IMG/VR virus record: IMGVR_UViG_3300042566_001780
Location: 1 to 64,000 of that record
DNA: 64,000 nt
Direction: 5' to 3' (one strand)
Below, piece after piece: positions 346-56,113 of this stretch. Position 1 is the first letter of the stretch. Each line of letters opens with the position of its first letter. A program made the translations under genes and the position numbers. Under the pieces are notes generated by a model that saw only the letters and a list, made by a program, of their open reading frames with translations, did not search any database and had not been told where the DNA came from.

Positions 346-511
346 TGCCCGTGTAGTTGAGTGGTAAAAACAGACACTGAGTTGCAGCAATTCTAGACAT
401 GATGCAACAATGCTTTCATAACACGAAGGTAGTAGATCGGCCGGTTTGCTATCTGATTATGAGAGTGTAAAGGTGGAAGGTCGTGGGTTCGAGTCCCTCC
501 ATGGGTAGCCA
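346..511 (+). ncRNA. tRNA-like RNA with ~85-nt structured insertion replacing the anticodon loop
   Basis: Acceptor (T)GCCCGTG/CATGGGT(A), D arm GTT-GAGTGGTAAA-AAC, stem ACACT(374-378)/AGTGT(464-468), T arm GTGGG-TTCGAGT-CCCTC, terminal GCCA; internal 12-bp hairpin 427-454. Confidence 0.75.
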
Positions 512-1728: not shown

Positions 1729-2403
1729 ATGAAAAAAGTTATTGAGATTAGGCCTGCTGAAGGCGGTGAAGATTCTAAGTTGTTTGTCAGTGATCTGGCA
1801 AACGCATATGTGAAGTTGTCCATGAAAAAGGGCTGAAAGCACCAGCTGTCAGATTGTGATTCTTACACAACAATCACAATTACTGGTCACGATTTGACAG
1901 CTCTATCTCAAGAAGCCGGTGGTCACAGAATTCAGCGAGTACCGCCAACTGAAAGAAAATGTCGGGTACACACATCAACTGTTACTGTAGCAGTTCTAGA
2001 TGGTGATTCTTTAGTTGGCACAATTGCACTAGATCAAAAAGATCTCAAGCTTGAATGGTATTCTGGTACTGGATGTGGTGGCCAAAATCGTAATAAGGTG
2101 ATGGCTTCTTGTAGATTGACGCACGTTCCAACAGGAATTGTGAAAACGTCCCAAACAAGAAGCCGCGAAACTTCTTATGCTCAAGCATTGACTGCATTAA
2201 CTCAAGCAGTCAATGAAGGTTTGACAAAATCAAAGTTGAGCCAATTCAATCAAATTCGTAAGAATCAGGTTGGAAGTGGCGAACGCGGTGATAAAATAAG
2301 AACTTATCGATTTCAAGATGATTCAGTAAAAGATCATCGCACAAACAAAAGTGCTTCTGTTGCAAAAGTAATGAATGGTCATTTTGACCTTCTTTGGAAA
2401 TAA
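1729..2403 (+). CDS. RF1-type peptide chain release factor homolog lacking domain 1, with in-frame TGA at 1834-1836
   Basis: ATG 1729 with AAGGA RBS gives MKKVIEIRPAEGGEDSKLF..., in frame with GHRIQRVPPTE (PxT), GTGCGGQNRNK (GGQ) and GERGDKIRTYRF; the TGA occupies the conserved Trp position of RF1 (xxGW). Confidence 0.88.
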
Positions 2404-2714: not shown

Positions 2715-3089
2715 ATGAAACTCGAAAACCTCGTTATTGACAAAAAGCCTGATACAAAAGCAGCTACTACTTCTGCTCCAGAGGAAACTCCGGGTGGTGC
2801 CACTGTGATGATCTTGAATGATCCTATCACTCCAGCAGAAGTTGTAGTTGAAGCTATCATGCATGGTACTGGATTGTCGAAACAGGCTGCTATGAAGCGC
2901 ATGATGCGTGCTCATCGTAATGGTTGGGTGCCTATTGCTTCTTATGCTACTAAAGACATTGCTGAAACGATTGCAAACAAAATCGAGCAACACGCTCGAA
3001 ACAATCCGAACTATGACCACTATCGTCCATTTGTTCGTCATAACGGACCTTGGCCGCTAGCTGTTGAAGTAATGGATGCTGAACAATGA
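2715..3089 (+). CDS. clpS: ClpS-like Clp protease adaptor
   Basis: VMILNDPITPAEVVVEAI...MMRAHRNG...YATKDIAETI matches the ClpS core. Confidence 0.85.
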   Translation: MKLENLVIDKKPDTKAATTSAPEETPGGATVMILNDPITPAEVVVEAIMHGTGLSKQAAMKRMMRAHRNGWVPIASYATKDIAETIANKIEQHARNNPNYDHYRPFVRHNGPWPLAVEVMDAEQ

Positions 3090-3095
3090 AATGAT

Positions 3096-3172
3096 GCACC
3101 GATGACGGAGCGGTCTAACGTCTACGCCTGCAAAGCGTGTGTTCCCAGGTTCAAATCCTGGTCGGTGCTCCA
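3096..3172 (+). tRNA. trnC: tRNA-Cys(GCA)
   Basis: GCACCGA/TCGGTGC acceptor, anticodon GCA, U73 discriminator, CCA. Confidence 0.95.
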
Positions 3173-3245
3173 AAGTTTTTGCTACTCAAGTGATGAGGAA
3201 GACATCTCGGTGATTGTGACAAATCATCAACAAAATGAGTAGCTA

Positions 3246-3276
3246 TTGAACAAATGATGAGTTTTTGTGATATAAT
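3246..3276 (+). promoter_or_regulatory. Early-type promoter (TTGAAC ... TGTGATATAAT)
   Basis: Extended -10 at 3266-3276; possible -35 TTGAAC with a long (19 nt) spacer. Confidence 0.55.
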
Positions 3277-3284
3277 TCACCTAC

Positions 3285-3367
3285 AAACTCTTCATAAACT
3301 GAATCTTGCTTCTATTACCAACGTTTTTGCCGAAACACCAGGGTGAGATTCAGTTTATGAGTAGTTT
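3285..3367 (+). ncRNA. Long stem-loop RNA immediately downstream of promoter
   Basis: 18-bp stem 3292-3309/3343-3360 plus AAACT/AGTTT; pyrimidine-rich loop starting TTCTA. Confidence 0.5.
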
Positions 3368-3371
3368 TATT

Positions 3372-3445
3372 GGGACCTTAATTTAAAAGCAAAATGTCTC
3401 CCTTACATGGAGAATTCGGCGGGGCAGTACCGTCAGGTCCTACCA
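3372..3445 (+). tRNA. trnV: Non-canonical tRNA-Val(TAC)
   Basis: GGGACCT/AGGTCCT acceptor, TCTCC-CTTACAT-GGAGA anticodon arm, A73, CCA; T loop GGCAGTA instead of TTCRAAT; D loop without GG. Confidence 0.75.
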
Positions 3446-3479
3446 CATTTTTCAAAATCTAGAATAGATTTACTTTTTC

Positions 3480-3638
3480 AGACGGCTATTTGATCAGCTA
3501 CTTCTACATCTTAATTACTGTTTTGCTGATCACGCTTTCCGTCTACACTTTTCAAGTTGGCTACTAATTCAGTTACTTCATAATCGCATCAGCGGTTGCA
3601 AAAACCGCTACCATTCCACTGAATTTCCTTTCCAATTT
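3480..3638 (+). ncRNA. Two tandem copies of a structured RNA motif (GG-CTAYT-N8-TACTTC...N8'-NNCTTT-CC)
   Basis: Copy 1 at 3480-3544 (stem TGATCAGC/GCTGATCA) and copy 2 at 3554-3638 (stem AATTCAGT/ACTGAATT): different stem sequences, same geometry and same loop motifs. Confidence 0.7.
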
Positions 3639-3658
3639 CATTTTTTGAAAGTTTCATC

Positions 3659-5788
3659 ATGAACAAGCTCTCCATTGCATTTGCAAACAATCTCGCCATC
3701 ATTCCGACCCATGATAATGGCGATACCAAAAATACCGCTCTTGCAATGAGTGTTCAAGCTGAACTAATGAATGTCGGCTTCATGTTGAGCAAAGAAGCTT
3801 TCTCTTATCTTGAGACACGCACTGAGTCTTTCATTGCATCCTTCCATAACGGTATCATTCCTCTTGCAAAATCCGCAAAGGGCGTCACTAGCAAGAAGTA
3901 TTCTCCACTTTGGAAGAACTTCCCAATTGATGTTATGGCTGCATCTGATGCAGAGCTCTACATCACTGCGCTTATCCATTACTGGACTAATGGTACTTGG
4001 TCACCAGACGCGGAGCTGAAGGCTCGCGGTTTTGCTTTTGAAAAGAAAAACTTTATTGAGCTAAAGCTTGCTCCTGAAAATTGGGAGCAAAGTCTTGTCA
4101 ATGATTTGGCGGCTTTCACCAAACCGCTTGATCCCACCAATCTAAATAACCTGGTGTGGCTTGCGCAGAACTGTCAAGTCACCATTCCGGAAGTTTCTGT
4201 CAAAGAAACTATGGCAGCTTTGGCTGTAGCTGGAATTCCAGTGAAGGTGAAATCTCCTGTTGATGTGCTGCGGATTGCAGTCGGCATGTCTGGTGGCGAT
4301 ATGGCTCTCCCTTCTATGCCAAAAATCCCGCAAATGAAGGATAAGAGCTTGATGCGTGGCAGCTACGCATTTAATGCAAAAGTACAAGAAGCTAATGCGT
4401 TGCGTGAAACTTTCAAATTCAAGAAGTTCACTCGAAGCGAACGCCGGTACATCCTTGGATTGCTTGAGTCGCTGAAATTTGTTGATGAAGCAGAAATGCA
4501 GCGTCATCTTGGCCGTTGGGTTCGTCTTGGCGAAGTTCTCCATCCAGGCGAAATGAAGAGCAAGTTTCCAAAAGCAGCAGCTGCATTCTCCAAGATTCGC
4601 AATCAAGAAGAAGTGAAGGTTCGTACCTTTGCTGGTCGTGTTGATCTGGCGTTCAAGCAATCTCCTGATGTTGGTATGCAAGTTCTTCAAGAACGTCCTG
4701 GTGAATTTGCACGTCGTCTTGATGCACTGGTTCGTAATGAAAAGCATGATGCACAGCAGGTGATTGATCGATTTGCAGAAGTTGCAGGCAAAGTGTCGAC
4801 TAAAGTGCTGTTCGAGATGTTTGATCATTTTGAAGGTCGCTTGAAGGACAAGCCGCGTATGGTCATGATCAAGGGTAAAGGTTCCAAGGTTAAGAATCTG
4901 GAAACTCTCCCGAAACTGCCAGATCATATTGTGGAAAATATCCAGAAGATGATCAAGCAACAATTGGCTAATCGCGCTGCAAAGTTGCCAGCAATGGGTA
5001 ATGTGTTTGTTGATGATCAACTGCTGAATATGCCGGTGCCATATTCTATGCAATCCTCTGCAGAGGGTACTTCTACTTTGGTTCGCGGTACTCGCATGCC
5101 AATTGTTGAAGGTGCCAATACACTGCGTGGGTTTGTTCACTGGTATGATGAGAATGGCGATGACGACATTGATTTGTCGGCTACGTTCCTGGGCGCAAAG
5201 TTTGAAATTCTTGGTGAATGTGCATTCTATGATCTGCGGTCCACGAATTTGAAGGCGTATCACTCTGGTGATGTTCGCCATCGTATTGGGCATAATGCAG
5301 AGTACATTGACTTTGATTTGAATTCTGCTAAGGAACATGGTGTCAAGTATGTGGTGTTCTCTGCATACAATTTCAATGGTAATGCCATTAAGTCTGTACC
5401 TGAATGCACCTTTGGCGTGATGGAGCGTTCTAAGCCAAAAAGCAATGAGATCTTTGACCCAGCTACTGCCCCACAAGCTATCAAAGTTCAGGCAAATAGC
5501 AATTCGGTGTTTCCTGTCATGATTGATGTGGAAGCACATGAATGGATTTGGTTGGATCTTGAATCTGAAGGTCGAGGCTTTGCTTCTTTCCATAGTAATT
5601 CTTCTACTCTTGACAAAATCAAGGCATTCACACAACAAGCAAAGTTCAGTGTCTATGATCTGATTTCTCTGCATGTTGGCAGTCGCTCTGGTACCATTGT
5701 GAACAAGATGGAAGATGCTGATCTCATCTATTCGTATGACGACATTGTTCGAAACTATTCGAAACTGACTGAGTTCTTGAACATCTAA
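3659..5788 (+). CDS. ROT/TROVE-like helical protein fused to C-terminal TerD domain (709 aa)
   Basis: Helical N-region with RPGEFARRLDALVR; C-terminal TerD-like segment (W...DDIDLSATF...HSGDVR...AEYIDFDL...YVVFSAYNF); architecture recalled for the Prok-RING_4-associated family, but no RING finger here. Confidence 0.65.
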   Translation: MNKLSIAFANNLAIIPTHDNGDTKNTALAMSVQAELMNVGFMLSKEAFSYLETRTESFIASFHNGIIPLAKSAKGVTSKKYSPLWKNFPIDVMAASDAELYITALIHYWTNGTWSPDAELKARGFAFEKKNFIELKLAPENWEQSLVNDLAAFTKPLDPTNLNNLVWLAQNCQVTIPEVSVKETMAALAVAGIPVKVKSPVDVLRIAVGMSGGDMALPSMPKIPQMKDKSLMRGSYAFNAKVQEANALRETFKFKKFTRSERRYILGLLESLKFVDEAEMQRHLGRWVRLGEVLHPGEMKSKFPKAAAAFSKIRNQEEVKVRTFAGRVDLAFKQSPDVGMQVLQERPGEFARRLDALVRNEKHDAQQVIDRFAEVAGKVSTKVLFEMFDHFEGRLKDKPRMVMIKGKGSKVKNLETLPKLPDHIVENIQKMIKQQLANRAAKLPAMGNVFVDDQLLNMPVPYSMQSSAEGTSTLVRGTRMPIVEGANTLRGFVHWYDENGDDDIDLSATFLGAKFEILGECAFYDLRSTNLKAYHSGDVRHRIGHNAEYIDFDLNSAKEHGVKYVVFSAYNFNGNAIKSVPECTFGVMERSKPKSNEIFDPATAPQAIKVQANSNSVFPVMIDVEAHEWIWLDLESEGRGFASFHSNSSTLDKIKAFTQQAKFSVYDLISLHVGSRSGTIVNKMEDADLIYSYDDIVRNYSKLTEFLNI

Positions 5789-5807: not shown

Positions 5808-5832
5808 AAAAGGGAAGCATTTGCTTCCCTTT
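5808..5832 (+). terminator. Intrinsic terminator
   Basis: AAAGGGAAGC-ATTT-GCTTCCCTTT followed by a T-rich tail. Confidence 0.8.
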
Positions 5833-30311: not shown

Positions 30312-33300
30312 ATGGCATCAAATAAAAACACCGTTTATACGAAGGCATTAGTTAGTTTTCTGCTTGATACAAAGCCGTATAGTAGAAAACTAACTGAAAT
30401 CAATGAAATCTATAAACTGGATGAATCCATAAGTGTTTCATTTAGTGATGAATTATTCACGGGTGCTACGCTAAAGTCTGCTTGGCCATATTCATTTTTT
30501 TCAAGTGGTTCTTCATCGCTGCAACCATTAAAGTTCCAGCGTATTAGCAATTACCAAGATTACGGCAAATATGTCAATAATCAACAATTACTAAGTCGTG
30601 GGGCTTTTAAAATTGGCCGAGATGAGAGCGTCAGCCTTAGCATGATTCCTAATACCTATGATCCAAAATCATTATCTGGTATTGGGCTTAAGGATTGCTA
30701 TGTCCAAAAAGAGGGCAATCCTGTTGATGTCCAATACTTAATTGAAGGTATTGATCATTTCTTAAGTAAAGGTAGTTATTCATTTCAAGTAAAACAGATT
30801 ACTGGATCAAATGTATCCGGGACCATTATCAAAACTTATGATGATTTAGATGGTCCATTTCCGACAGATGTTGAGATTACTTTTGAATATGATGAGTTAA
30901 TTTTACTTGGGCCAGTGATTCAAGTTGATAGTAATACTATTCGTGTAACAAACCCAGGTGAAATAAAGGTTTACGGTACGATTAATGGTGGTGCATATAG
31001 CCCGCAATTCACTGAACTGCGCAATGAAGCTATTATTTCTGCAGCGCAACAAGCGGCAGCAAATGCTGCATATGATTTGGATAATCCAAATAGCGCTATT
31101 AATCAAATTTCTAGCATCATGGATGCAATTGATGCTCAGTTGACAATCACGCCAAATACTGAAGCACAAAGGGAAGTTGACTCCATCTTTTCTATTTTAG
31201 AAACACCGAAATTACCTTATTCTTATGCAGATCTAATTGGTGCATTAATTAATGCAAGCACACCAGTAATATCTGGATATGCTTCATGGAATAATGTATC
31301 TCTTAAACTTGAATCTCTTAGCCCAAGAATCTTGTTTAATGATTTCACTGATATGAGCTTGAGAGAATCTGGCAAGCTTAATTATGTCGATATTGTTGAT
31401 GACACTATCCAAATAACTAATATTGATCCAAATATTGATCGTGAAAATTACGAAGAGTTTACAGTAACGGCTATCAGCGACACTCAATTATTAGTGTCGG
31501 GTAGTTTATCAGGTAATATTGGACTTGCAGAATTAGGTTCACGTTTTGAGAGTGATTATCTAAACTTCGACGTGTCTGCAGGAACTAACTTACTTGTGGT
31601 TGGTTCAAAATTTGTACTAACGCCAAGCGCGAAAATTACAGTTTCTAAAAATACTACTGCACAATCATGGTCAGTAATAAAAACTAATCCAATTGCTTAT
31701 TCGCGCCCGGTATATGCATCACCAACTAATGCATATGCAAAAATAATATCGTTAGATGCAAAAGAAGGTCAAATAACATTTTTAGATCAAGATTTTCCAT
31801 CTGGCAAATTAGAACTAGAAGTCATTTCTGCTACCCAAGCCCGGATGTATTGTGAAAATGAGCCTACTTATTCTCCATTAATTACATTCAACACTGTATT
31901 CAATGACGGTCGTCTTGGATTCACTGTTGTAAATGGCACTTTTGCGCCATTGCAAATAGGTGATCGCATCTTAATGCGAGTATTAAATCTTCCTCCAAAT
32001 GTTGAAGGTTTAGATTTGTACTTTGGTTATGATGTTGATGCATATGATGCAAACAATTTAGTTTACAACAATGTGTCATCAGCTATTGAAAACTACCTAA
32101 CAACAATCGACTTTGGTTTTGACAGCAGGTTTATCGGATACGATCTTGCAACATTTAATTTAGTCATTGATGATAATGCAGTTAGCAATAGAGCATGGAG
32201 ATTAAGGGCTCTTGCTGATTTATCAAAACCGCTGTTAATGCCATCTGGGATTGTTAATTTGCTTGGTACAGATGATCCAACAAATCCTACAGCATTTGCA
32301 AAATATGATAGTGATAATGATGCTACATCAGAAGGAATTCAGAGCTCCACTGATTTTGATGATTTAGATGATTTGCAATTGTGGTATGCAAATAGATTTG
32401 CATTAGAATATCAGGATGGGGAAGCCGGCATATGGCAAACAGTGAATGCGAACATTCAAGTAAATCAGCGTTACACTTTTTCTGAATATGGAATAGCTTT
32501 TACTGTCGTTCCAGCAGCAAAACCATTTATTGCATCTAGATCCACATCCACTCAATATGTAAACACCTCTGGCGGATTAGTTACATCAGTGGTTGATGGT
32601 GGCGATATTATCTATTTCAAGATCGTTAATCCAGAACCGAAATTAGAAAATCCAGCATCTATTCTATCCAACACTCCTAGAATGATAATGTATGGAGAGC
32701 ATTTTCATAAATGTCCTTCAGCAAATTGGGTAGTTACGAAAGTCGCAGGAGGCTTCACTCTTCAAGGTAAGTACTCTTCTAATAACATAAATGTCTATTC
32801 AACACCTCTATTTTTATCTTCTGAAGATGGTTTAAGCTATCACATAAAAGAAAACAGTCTGCATTTCACCATAGTTGAAGGTAGAGGAATGGCAGTTGGT
32901 GATACTTTCACCTTCACAACTTTTGAAAATCATGCATCGTTCTTAGTGTATGGATCTGTGACTGGATGGACTGCTCCGGCCAGATTGAATACATGGTATT
33001 GGAATGGACACATCGGCTTCAAGATACGTGCTGCCCAATGCGAATTGTTTGTTGATGGCGAATTACAGTCGACAAATGCTACAAGTTGGGTTACTTCTTA
33101 TGGAAATATTGAGCTTGATTATCTAAAGGAAGATCTATCTGATTCAATTATCAATTTCCAATCATTAGGAAATGGTACTTGGTTAGCATATCGCAATGGT
33201 AATTTACTTGGATCTGGAGTAAATGAAATTGTCATTGATGAATTTGGTATTACTCTGCCAAATGCTCCTGAATCTACAAACATTTCAATGAAGATTCTAG

Positions 33301-54503: not shown

Positions 54504-56113
54504 TCAAAATTTGAACACGGAATTGATATAGCTTCCTTGCAGCGTTGGCTTTTCAATTCCCATTGCATCAAAGATACCTTCAATTTTTGAGTCAATCAAT
54601 TTTTCTTCTGTTAGCGCCATATCAATCCTGAAGTTTTCGTTGAACCATTGAGGAATATGCATTAAGTCAGAAGGGAATGCGATTGATTTAAGACCGAACT
54701 CATTGGGCATTAAGTAAAAAACGACACCTTTATCACCTGATTTGATCATAGGTGCATCAGGTTGGAATTGAGTAATTAGTTCATTGTAGTTGATTGCTGC
54801 TCTTACATGTCCTGGGAGATTAATCTTCTTATTGTTCTTTTTCTCATTCAACGTCCAATCAGCATACAACTTGTCGAGGTTATTAATCTGCTTAGCGCCG
54901 CCAAGAGCAAGAACATCTTCCGACTTATGAATCAATTTACCACGAGATTCATTGACTAGTTTTTCAATATCTGAATACGGCTTTTTATCAAGAATCAAAT
55001 CCATCAGTTTCTTCAAGAAATCTTGAATGACTTTAGGAGTGTCGGCTTTCTTGATTTCTGAACCCATCGATTTCAGTTTAGGTTTTTCACGAAGATCAAG
55101 ACCTTCTAAGTTGACTACTTTAAGCGTGTACTTTTTCTTTGCAGTCAAGAATAAACCAGTTTCTGCAACTACTTCACGTGCTACCTTAATAAGATCTTCA
55201 CGACCTTCAGTACAGTTGAAACTCTTTTTCATGAATGCTGAGAACATGTCATTCACTGTAGAAGCAACATCATCAGCAATAGTTACAGCATCTTCATAGT
55301 TGTCGACAGGAATGCTGAAATACGCAGAGTCGGTATCAGAATAGATGCACTGAGTGTTTTTCGAATAGTAGAATGCGCCATAGCATGGATGCGCAGTTCC
55401 CTTGTACATTAGCAGTTCGCCAGCCCGCGTTGGGAATTTTTCCAACTCGTTCCATTTGCAATGCTTACGGTATAAAGCTAGATCATCACTTGAAATGACT
55501 GTTTTATATGAAGATCGAGTTTCACCTTCATCAGTAACTGTAGTTACCAAACGAGATGGTGCATAGCGTTTTTCAATAACACACTCTTGACCAGACACTA
55601 ATTCGCCAATAGTCTCATTCATGAAATGCGTAATTTGACGCCCACACCCGGTTACTGATGCGCCAACCTCTCGCCGCCCAAATCTGAAGGCCACGTTAAG
55701 AAGAGAACCGTACGTGCTGTTCCTTAGTGTTACGGTGATATCGTTTCCATATCACCTCTCATTGTTGCCAATGAGAGCAGACTATATCATCATCCACATG
55801 GGATGCCGGGCGCTTCGAGATCACTTGACCCCTACGAGCATATGCTCTAGTCGTTGCACCTTCCGTGTTAGCGGCTTGGCTCAGGATTGTCCACTTGGGA
55901 GTTTCCCTGAATTCACCCGGTTTTCGACAACCATTGCTGATTGAAGGCTCTAAATCAAAGCTGAATTTTTTTCGTAAGCTGTAAAAGATCGTAGTGTTCT
56001 GCTTGTTGAGCAGCATATTGGATCTTTTCATATTCTTCTCGTGTATACAGTTTGCTTCCATCAAGAATCAAACTGCCATTTTTTATTCCTGTTCTAATTT
56101 CATCAATGTTCAT
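54504..56113 (-). CDS. gp43: Family B DNA polymerase C-terminal subunit; exon 1 56113-55958, exon 2 55721-54504
   Basis: Splicing restores motif B LQLTKKIQL|NSTYG; motif C YSDTDS; KKKY; ATG 56113 overlaps the end of the N-terminal gene. Confidence 0.85.
55722..55957 (-). mobile_element. Group I self-splicing intron (236 nt, no homing endonuclease ORF)
   Basis: 5' exon ends in U (GCUU paired with GAGC in P1); intron ends in G; core GGTGAATTCAGGGAAACTC, AATCCTGAGCCAAG, AAGGTGCAACGACT, GATATAGTCT. Confidence 0.92.

What the first reader, a model, noticed from the sequence alone, without database searches (positions are those of the whole stretch)
3285..5788. Repeated covarying RNA motif upstream of a ROT/TROVE-like-TerD gene: candidate phage Ro/Y-like RNP
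Two adjacent elements (3480-3544 and 3554-3638) share the exact architecture GG-CTAYT-[8-bp stem]-TACTTC...-[stem']-NNCTTT-CC. Their stem sequences are completely different, which amounts to internal covariation. A third long hairpin with a TTCTA loop sits at 3285-3367. They lie directly before a 709-aa protein resembling the ROT/TROVE-like plus TerD family. Ro60/Rsr proteins are encoded beside their Y RNA ligands and RNA-repair genes. I infer that these RNAs are ligands or autoregulatory sites for a divergent Ro-like protein acting in RNA repair or quality control.
Basis: partly seen in the sequence, partly recalled or inferred. Interest (0 to 1): 0.8.

Follow-up and report, generated by a model that had tools for sequence, protein, structure and literature searches.

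The report
New small RNA family with partner protein
Two small structured RNAs upstream of a jumbo-phage gene belong to a large RNA family not in Rfam that sits beside this helical-repeat plus TerD protein in hundreds of phages and bacteria, pointing to an uncharacterised RNA-protein particle built like Ro60/Y RNA.

Summary
Window 3480-3544 and 3554-3638 share one architecture: outer stem ending GG/CC, internal loop CUAYN / NNNUUU, an 8-bp inner stem, and an apical loop starting UACUUC. Their stems are unrelated. The motif occurs only twice in the 292-kb phage genome.

A covariance model built from it finds 306 copies in 158 sources holding homologues of the 709-aa gene (phage and bacterial). 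All lie on the gene's strand, just upstream or downstream, 1-6 per locus, and none elsewhere in whole genomes. Pairing is 93-98% with heavy covariation. No Rfam family matches.

Some copies carry a YrlA-type tRNA-like apex. Others sit, circularly permuted, inside tRNAs. RNA-seq of a Bacillus cereus-group locus shows the two elements as a discrete, sense RNA more abundant than the mRNA.

Best reading: a Ro/Y-like RNA-protein particle that belongs to neither the Y RNA nor the TROVE family. Binding and function are inferred, not shown.

The parts
3247..3276 (+). Sigma-70-like promoter (TGAACA, 18 nt, TG-n-TATAAT), the likely start of the transcript that carries the RNAs and the gene
   Evidence: Promoter scan, 10 of 12 matches with an extended -10. 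Conserved in L005. Function is inferred.
3285..3367 (+). Long hairpin at the 5' end of the leader. It is lineage-specific and not a member of the repeated family.
   Evidence: z -5.85. Compensatory stem changes and a conserved loop in L005. Its loop sequence is absent from all other fetched loci.
3372..3449 (+). Degenerate tRNA-like element: 7-bp acceptor stem, anticodon-like arm with loop CUUACAU, a second 5-bp hairpin and an ACCA tail
   Evidence: Fold. ARAGORN calls it tRNA-Val(tac) only in its lax mitochondrial mode. Present in L009, absent in L005. This is a hint, not a demonstrated tRNA.
3480..3544 (+). RNA copy A of the new family (model R1): 6-bp outer stem, internal loop CUAUU / CGCUUU, 8-bp inner stem, 26-nt apical loop starting UACUUC
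   Evidence: Fold z -4.95. R1 score 57.9 bits, E 3e-13.
3554..3638 (+). RNA copy B of the same family: 7-bp outer stem, internal loop CUACU / UCCUUU, 8-bp inner stem, apical loop starting UACUUC that holds an extra 7-bp hairpin
   Evidence: Fold z -4.26. R1 score 55.6 bits, E 1.4e-12.
3659..5053 (+). N-terminal helical-repeat domain (aa 1-465) of the 709-aa protein, the presumed RNA-binding part
5099..5620 (+). TerD-fold domain (aa 481-654)
5621..5788 (+). C-terminal helical tail (aa 655-709) and stop codon
   Evidence: Secondary structure of the model.
5809..5832 (+). Intrinsic terminator-like hairpin after the gene
   Evidence: Terminator scan: 10 pairs, 5 G-C.

Best explanation
The two elements are small non-coding RNAs of a previously undescribed family. 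I call its covariance model R1. Their conserved module is the specific binding site for the protein encoded next to them. That module consists of a GG/CC-closed outer helix, the internal loop CUAUN / NNNUUU, an 8-bp helix and the single-stranded U(A/C)CUUCUA.

RNA and protein would form a ribonucleoprotein organised like Ro60/Y RNA. A stem formed by the RNA's two ends would hold the protein. A variable apical module would carry the second function. That apex is minimal in this phage, a YrlA-type tRNA mimic in some relatives, and a whole tRNA in others.

In this phage the RNAs are probably made from the promoter at 3247-3276 as the 5' part of the gene's transcript and then released or kept as a stable structured leader. 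The TerD domain stands where Ro60 has its vWA domain and probably binds Ca2+ or a small ligand.

The setting inside phage tRNA clusters suggests the particle acts on tRNA or other structured RNA during infection: quality control, protection, or capture of a host RNase.

Shown: the RNA structure, its linkage to the gene, its expression in one bacterium, and the TerD fold. Inferred: binding, the Ro-like ring, and the biological role.
For: 1. Structure. In a 19-copy seed, 97% of cells pair and 13 of 16 pairs change on both sides. In 135 distinct phage copies 93.4% pair. In 104 distinct bacterial copies 97.6% pair. Slid controls give 29-54%.

2. Linkage. R1 finds 197 hits in 78 phage-side sources, window included, and 109 hits in 80 bacterial loci.
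- Every hit is on the gene's strand.
- Of the 257 best hits, 164 are upstream, 93 downstream and none inside the gene.
- With speed filters off, 15 of 19 apparently empty loci also show copies.

3. Specificity. The only credible hits are those beside the gene: in the 292-kb phage (one further 23-bit hit there was rejected as chance), in 6-Mb and 8-Mb Paenibacillus genomes, and in a 389-kb phage.

4. Reach. Copies flank homologues of only 23-30% identity in cultured phages XacN1 and Weasels2.

5. Conservation pattern. The loops are conserved and the stems are free to vary, as expected for a protein-recognition site.

6. tRNA-like partners.
- Apices of L126, L096 and L072 copies hit Rfam YrlA at 30-39 bits, below the threshold of 69.
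- L133 and L096 show T-arm, acceptor-like hairpin and D-arm in YrlA order.
- A permuted module sits in the anticodon arm of tRNAs in six phage loci.

7. Expression in the B. cereus-group locus L092.
- Run X21: depth about 41 over the two elements, 0 in the next 200 nt, about 9 in the gene, and molecule ends at 1144.
- Run X23, stranded: sense reads at 130-170 over the elements against 30-50 in the gene.

Against: - No binding experiment exists.
- Sequence methods see no TROVE relation.
- The RNAs lack the Ro-binding motif GNCGAAN0-1G / GGUCCGA (PMC4201824).
- In this window no terminator separates the RNAs from the ORF, so here they could act only in cis.
- The RNA-seq comes from a distant bacterial homologue, at low depth (72 and 395 reads), and the runs are coded.
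- Alignments A4 and A7 are fitted to the model, which inflates pairing somewhat.
Confidence: 0.65

Rival explanations
1. The elements are purely cis-acting leader structures. The protein, or another factor, binds its own mRNA leader to autoregulate translation or stability, as ribosomal-protein leaders do, and no free RNA species exists.
For: In the window, the RNAs lie between a promoter and the ORF with no terminator between them. In bacteria most copies are upstream: 57 of 66 loci have upstream copies only.
Against: - 93 of the 257 best hits are downstream of the gene, in arrays of up to 6 and interleaved with tRNA genes.
- In the B. cereus-group locus run X21 shows zero coverage between the elements and the gene.
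- Some copies carry tRNA-like domains.
- Copy B ends 20 nt before the start codon and does not pair with the ribosome-binding region.
Confidence: 0.13
2. The RNAs are tRNA-related decoys or processing substrates that act on their own, for example against host anticodon nucleases. They are only co-located with the gene because both ride in phage tRNA clusters.
For: Phage copies sit in tRNA arrays. Some copies have T-arms or are embedded in tRNAs. The conserved CUUCUAA equals the anticodon loop of the phage's own tRNA-Arg(UCU), read directly.
Against: - The linkage also holds in bacterial chromosomes that have no tRNA cluster nearby.
- In whole genomes, copies are found only beside the gene.
- In the consensus no 5-bp stem closes CUUCUAA into an anticodon-like loop.
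Confidence: 0.1
3. It is a type III toxin-antitoxin-like pair. An array of RNA units upstream of the gene, partly insulated by a terminator, neutralises a toxic protein.
For: The B. cereus-group locus shows RNA in excess over the mRNA, with a fall in coverage between the elements and the gene. The units are tandem and lie next to a single gene.
Against: - The units are not near-identical direct repeats. Their stems are unrelated.
- The protein has about 700 aa and no recognisable nuclease domain.
- There is no PADLOC hit.
- Arrays often lie downstream of the gene.
- The gene is carried by large phages in their tRNA regions.
Confidence: 0.06
4. The elements are tandem riboswitches that sense a small ligand, for example a metal or a nucleotide derivative linked to TerD, and control the gene.
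For: The loops are conserved and the stems covary. Copies come in tandem pairs in 5' regions.
Against: - No expression platform is visible.
- Many copies are downstream or lie in tRNA arrays.
- The apical region is freely variable and accepts 20-100-nt inserts, including tRNA-like domains. That is unlike a ligand pocket.
- The motif is restricted to a single gene family.
Confidence: 0.03

Closest known systems
Ro60 (Rsr) with Y RNAs, especially bacterial and phage YrlA (Rfam RF02553), for example the phiLo phage Ro60-Yrl particle (PMC12135203, PMC4201824)
   Same: - One to several small RNAs are encoded beside the protein gene, on the same strand.
- The RNA is closed by a stem formed from its two ends, with a conserved internal-loop region and a variable apical module.
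- In some members the apex is a T-arm / acceptor-like / D-arm tRNA mimic in the YrlA order.
- Both occur in large phages and in bacteria.
- The protein's helical-repeat domain gives its longest collinear structural matches to Ro60.
   Different: - No TROVE Pfam signal, and no vWA domain. A TerD domain takes its place.
- There are about 140 extra N-terminal residues.
- The RNAs lack the Ro-binding motif GNCGAAN0-1G / GGUCCGA and have GG-CUAUN ... U(A/C)CUUCUA ... UUU-CC instead.
- Rfam Y RNA families do not reach threshold.
- One Paenibacillus genome has both a canonical TROVE+vWA protein and this protein, so they are separate systems.
MXAN_6230/SCO0854 family RING domain-containing protein (NCBIfam NF041916)
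   Same: Clear sequence homology over the helical and TerD parts: E 1e-90 for the window protein and up to 4e-152 for bacterial members. Same fold in the ESM Atlas search, TM 0.65 by the query.
   Different: The window protein scores below the family cut-off (305 against 600 bits) and has no RING domain. No function is published for that family in the library searched. One true RING member has only a weak R1-like element upstream (13 bits).
TerD (tellurite-resistance / Ca2+-binding) proteins, PDB 2kxt, 3ibz, 2qz7
   Different: Here TerD is one domain of a 709-aa protein. There are no ter operon neighbours, and the Pfam TerD model does not score.
Type III toxin-antitoxin RNA arrays (ToxIN-like)
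   Same: Tandem RNA units sit next to the single protein they are thought to bind, and the RNA is in excess over the mRNA.
   Different: The units differ in sequence. The protein is large and has no known RNase fold. Arrays can lie downstream.

Membership tests
Y RNA / YrlA (Rfam RF00019, RF02553) | Reaches the Rfam gathering score | tested here: not met
   No Y RNA hit in the window even at E up to 10. The best relatives score 29.6-39 bits against a threshold of 69, and only through their tRNA-like apex.
Y RNA / YrlA (Rfam RF00019, RF02553) | Ro-binding motif GNCGAAN0-1G (bacteria) or GGUCCGA (vertebrates) near the 5' end (PMC4201824) | tested here: not met
   The consensus of 135 copies is NNNNGG-CUAUN-[8 bp]-U(A/C)CUUCUA. 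The Ro motif is absent.
Y RNA / YrlA (Rfam RF00019, RF02553) | Encoded next to the partner protein gene, closed by a stem of the 5' and 3' ends, about 60-130 nt | tested here: met
   Median length 68 nt, range 57-134.
Y RNA / YrlA (Rfam RF00019, RF02553) | tRNA-like domain (T-arm, acceptor-like stem, D-arm) | tested here: not met
   The window copies have none. It is present in a minority of family members: 10 of the 257 best hits have a T-loop pattern, and L133 and L096 have the full set.
Ro60 / TROVE (Pfam PF05731 plus vWA_Ro60 PF25045) | TROVE domain detectable by sequence | tested here: not met
   No hit in the window protein or in 34 family members at E up to 1. None in the phage genome. 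hhalign against four TROVE+vWA proteins gives probability 0.14%.
Ro60 / TROVE (Pfam PF05731 plus vWA_Ro60 PF25045) | C-terminal vWA domain closing the ring | tested here: not met
   The C-terminal domain is a TerD beta-sandwich.
Ro60 / TROVE (Pfam PF05731 plus vWA_Ro60 PF25045) | HEAT-like helical-repeat ring fold | tested here: inconclusive
   VIA-align results:
All are collinear. Foldseek against the PDB and against Swiss-Prot models finds no Ro60.
Ro60 / TROVE (Pfam PF05731 plus vWA_Ro60 PF25045) | Binds the adjacent RNAs | not testable with these tools
   Needs EMSA, RIP or a structure.
TerD domain (Pfam PF02342) | TerD beta-sandwich fold with acidic metal-binding motifs | tested here: met
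NCBIfam NF041916 RING_SCO0854 | Score over the curated cut-off (600 bits), and a RING domain | tested here: not met
   305 bits, aligned to profile positions 381-766 only. This is a RING-less relative.
Cis-regulatory leader / riboswitch | Always located in the 5' untranslated region of the regulated gene | tested here: not met
   93 of the 257 best hits are downstream of the gene.
Type III toxin-antitoxin | Near-identical direct RNA repeats and a small endoribonuclease toxin | tested here: not met
   The stems of neighbouring copies are unrelated. The protein has 709 aa, no nuclease family hit and no PADLOC hit.

The most novel reading that the evidence does not exclude
R1 is a portable protein-binding RNA handle for a new, widespread class of ribonucleoprotein. 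The handle occurs in three forms:
- alone;
- carrying a tRNA-like apex;
- inserted, circularly permuted, into the anticodon arm of tRNAs.

On this reading the helical-repeat plus TerD protein is an analogue, or a very distant relative, of Ro60. It would use a TerD sensor domain in place of vWA. Phages would deploy it in their tRNA clusters to handle, protect or mature tRNAs and tRNA-like RNAs during conflict with the host.
Probability: 0.4. Interest if true: 0.88.

Novelty: new variant of a known kind. Interest (0 to 1): 0.8.

Why it matters
The protein family is large: 3,052 clusters at 50% identity. It is present in jumbo phages, the Bacillus cereus group, Paenibacillus, Brevibacillus and many other phyla, and it is annotated only as "TerD family", "cytoplasmic" or "hypothetical" protein.

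Tying it to a specific, covarying RNA partner turns an orphan protein into a testable RNA-protein particle. It also adds a structured RNA family that is missing from Rfam 15.

The work gives a second, independent case of the Ro/Y design, a protein-binding stem plus a tRNA mimic. That bears on the long-open question of why Y RNAs mimic tRNAs.

The copies embedded in tRNAs hint at a direct link to tRNA biology in phage infection.

Tractable systems exist: B. thuringiensis, Paenibacillus, Xanthomonas phage XacN1 and Rhodococcus phage Weasels2.

Tried and rejected
- Rfam at gathering and at lax thresholds found no family for the motif.
- blastn of the locus against GenBank phages found no match.
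- The search for related loci with the single protein found nothing. The protein alignment was needed.
- Pfam, PADLOC and a PDB sequence search gave no informative hit for the N-domain.
- hhalign against four Bacillota TROVE+vWA proteins was negative, but that alignment is thin, Neff about 1.9.
- Foldseek of the N-domain against the PDB and Swiss-Prot models gave only noise.
- The third R1 hit in the window, 33074-33156, scores 23 bits and folds no better than shuffles (z 0.25). I rejected it as chance.
- I considered anticodon-loop mimicry, because CUUCUAA equals the loop of tRNA-Arg(UCU). I set it aside because no short stem closes it in the consensus.
- I considered a DNA-level role such as operators or iterons. 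I rejected it because all 306 hits share the gene's strand, the stems covary, and the bacterial copies are transcribed.
- The promoter and terminator I saw by eye in L092 were not called by the scan. I therefore rest only on the RNA-seq boundaries there.
- No permuted, tRNA-embedded module is present in this phage's own genome.
- The 2016 Burroughs and Aravind paper on RNA-repair systems, which may discuss ROT/TROVE-like proteins, is not held. Prior mention there cannot be excluded.
- Literature searches for TerD together with Y RNA or tRNA-like RNA gave only the 2021 jumbo-phage overview. That paper mentions ROT/TROVE proteins and TerD separately.
Full report
**Setting**

The window is the first 64 kb of a 291,687-bp virus record, a jumbo phage. 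The finding lies in a tRNA-rich stretch. It holds tRNA-Asn, Leu, Arg, Ser and Cys, an RF-1-domain protein and a ClpS homologue.

After tRNA-Cys (3096-3172) the order of features is:
- a sigma-70-like promoter at 3247-3276;
- a long hairpin at 3285-3367;
- a tRNA-like element at 3372-3449;
- the two repeated elements at 3480-3544 and 3554-3638;
- a 709-aa ORF at 3659-5788;
- a terminator-like hairpin at 5809-5832.

Both elements read GG-CUAYU-[8 nt]-UACUUC...[8 nt']-YSCUUU-CC. Both fold as a 6-7-bp outer stem, a 5 x 6-nt internal loop, an 8-bp inner stem and a large apical loop. Their z-scores are -4.95 and -4.26.

The stems share no sequence. The exact pattern occurs twice in the window, against 2.2 looser matches expected by chance. 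It also occurs only twice in the whole phage genome.

The long hairpin is also real (z -5.85). It is kept, with compensatory changes, in a relative whose protein is 69% identical. It is a different, lineage-specific structure and was seen in no other locus.

**The motif is a family**

The same tandem pair, with different stems, precedes homologues of the gene that are 96%, 69% and 50% identical.

I built a seed of 19 copies and gave it the structure by hand. It pairs in 97% of cells, and 13 of 16 pairs change on both sides. Sliding the partner strand gives 29-47%. The covariance model R1 was built from this seed.

R1 then found:
- 197 matches in 78 phage-side sources, window included;
- 109 matches in 80 bacterial loci.

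All 306 are on the strand of the gene. With the speed filters off, 15 of 19 loci that had looked empty also showed copies. Four loci still lack one, and two of those have under 210 nt of upstream sequence.

Of the 257 best matches, 164 lie upstream of the gene, 93 downstream and none inside it. There are 1-6 per locus, with a median length of 68 nt.

In whole genomes the only credible matches are those beside the gene. This held in the phage itself, in 6-Mb and 8-Mb Paenibacillus chromosomes, and in a 389-kb phage. The phage's one further hit (23 bits) was rejected as chance (see "What I could not settle").

Model-fitted alignments of 135 distinct phage copies and 104 distinct bacterial copies pair at 93.4% and 97.6%, with every inner-stem pair covarying in the phage set and 7 of 8 in the bacterial set. 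These alignments lean towards the model. The slid controls (34-54%) and the hand-made seed point the same way.

The consensus is NNNNGG-CUAUN-[N6 S U]-U(A/C)CUUCUA...[A S N6]-NNNUUU-CC-NNNN. The loops are conserved and the stems are free. No Rfam 15 family covers it.

**Links to tRNA-like RNAs**

In phages the gene and its RNAs sit in tRNA arrays.

In some copies the variable apex is a tRNA mimic:
- L126 3952-4057 matches Rfam YrlA at 39 bits, E 5e-7 locally, through a T-arm, a hairpin and a D-arm.
- L072 and L096 give weaker YrlA matches.
- L133 3614-3739 and L096 3581-3714 show T-arm, acceptor-like hairpin and D-arm in YrlA order, enclosed by the R1 stems.
- Several phage copies carry a T-arm only.

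The converse also occurs. Six phage loci end their array with a tRNA of about 125 nt. Five of the six were aligned. There the anticodon arm holds a 50-60-nt insert that carries the three conserved R1 strands in circularly permuted order. The proposed helices pair in 95.6% of cells, against at most 44% when slid. This rests on five sequences.

The R1 module therefore behaves as a portable handle that is joined to tRNA-like parts in several ways.

**Expression**

No run could be laid on the phage itself. I used the Bacillus cereus-group locus L092, where the two elements are at 1002-1064 and 1070-1138 and the gene starts at 1418.

Raw RNA-seq reads gave:

| Run | Elements | Between | Gene | Other |
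|---|---|---|---|---|
| X21 | depth about 41 (1023-1145) | 0 (1146-1309) | about 9 (its later part) | molecule ends at 1144 |
| X23 (stranded) | 64-173, sense | 116 then 85, falling to about 30 after 1268 | 11-51 | adapter-joined 5' ends at 1002 |

In that bacterium the elements are thus a discrete, abundant, sense RNA. Depth is low (72 and 395 reads), and the organism is far from this phage.

**The protein**

There is no Pfam hit. PHROGs places it in an unknown-function family. Sources name homologues "TerD family protein" or "cytoplasmic protein". The family has 3,052 clusters at 50% identity.

NCBIfam NF041916 (MXAN_6230/SCO0854 RING family) matches at E 1e-90 but below its cut-off. This is a RING-less relative.

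The AlphaFold model is confident, with pLDDT 86 and pTM 0.78. Residues 481-654 form a TerD fold:
- Foldseek E 1.6e-6;
- invariant acidic motifs.

The N-terminal 465 residues were modelled alone at pLDDT 89. Their longest collinear structural matches are to Ro60 proteins:

A Ro-like ring is therefore suggested but not shown.

One Paenibacillus genome encodes both a canonical TROVE+vWA protein and this protein, so the two are distinct systems. In bacteria no neighbouring protein gene is conserved. There is no defence-system hit.

**Interpretation**

The near-universal, strand-specific, genome-unique linkage of a covarying RNA to one protein family is best explained by the RNA being the protein's ligand. 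Several further points fit this reading:
- the linkage holds down to 23% protein identity in cultured phages XacN1 and Weasels2;
- the loops are conserved while the stems vary;
- the apices are modular;
- the RNA is expressed as a discrete species.

The design parallels Ro60/Y RNA, including the tRNA-mimic module (PMC4201824, PMC12135203). But the defining Ro-binding motif, the TROVE signature and the vWA domain are all absent. It works like Ro/Y but is not a member of either family.

A purely cis-regulatory role is unlikely given the downstream arrays, although in this window the RNAs are probably co-transcribed with the gene. The biological role is unknown. Its setting among tRNAs, an RF-1-like protein and ClpS points to translation and RNA maintenance during infection. 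The phage has two Rnl2-type RNA ligase genes far from the locus and no RtcB.

**What I could not settle**

- Binding is untested.
- The ring architecture is unproven.
- I could not tell whether the window's RNAs are released from the leader.
- I could not tell whether the inserted modules in tRNAs are removed.
The RNA family was found in neither Rfam nor the searchable literature.
- The weak third hit in the window (33074-33156) was rejected as chance.

Noticed in passing
L015 4219-4344; L019 4218-4343; L030 4187-4309; L041 4211-4333; L021 4154-4280; L025 4274-4402: These are tRNAs of about 125 nt with normal acceptor, D and T arms. A 50-60-nt insert in the anticodon arm carries the R1 module in circularly permuted order: AAUUUCY, a CC/GG hairpin, CUAUA, the inner helix and UACUUCUA. 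It is unknown whether the insert is an intron or a permanent extra arm.
   Followed up: partly
window 3372-3449: A degenerate tRNA-like element lies between the long hairpin and copy A. It has a 7-bp acceptor stem, an anticodon-like loop CUUACAU, an atypical T-arm and an encoded ACCA tail. ARAGORN calls it only in its lax mitochondrial mode. It is present in the 96% relative L009 and absent in L005.
   Followed up: partly
window 347-507: The Rfam tRNA match spans 161 nt at 35 bits. This would be a tRNA gene with an insertion of about 90 nt, and ARAGORN did not call it.
   Followed up: no
window 55758-55967 (- strand): Group I catalytic intron, 85 bits, E 3e-20.
   Followed up: no
window 1894-2403 and 2715-3089: The phage encodes an RF-1/PCRF-domain protein (169 aa) and a ClpS adaptor homologue (124 aa) just upstream of the locus. 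Both are syntenic in L005.
   Followed up: no
window 3181-3243: A conserved stem-loop lies between tRNA-Cys and the promoter (z -2.3). Its sequence is largely kept in L005.
   Followed up: no
L181 1908-2287 (Xanthomonas phage XacN1) and L182 3869-4226 (Rhodococcus phage Weasels2): Three R1 copies lie in each of two unannotated intergenic gaps, next to ORF396 and gp266. Both genes are annotated as hypothetical proteins. These are cultured phages in which the system could be tested.
   Followed up: partly
L188 4120-4185 (- strand): A high-GC, weak R1-like element (13 bits) lies 60 nt upstream of a true MXAN_6230/SCO0854 RING-family gene. It keeps UUCCUUCU and the two-helix layout. This is a single case.
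   Followed up: partly
L072 307-620: A phage-encoded tmRNA (112 bits) lies in the same tRNA/R1 cluster of another phage contig.
   Followed up: no
G000:C1 126120-126638 and 162243-162704: The phage genome has two Rnl2-type RNA ligase genes (PF09414), far from the locus. No RtcB was found.
   Followed up: no
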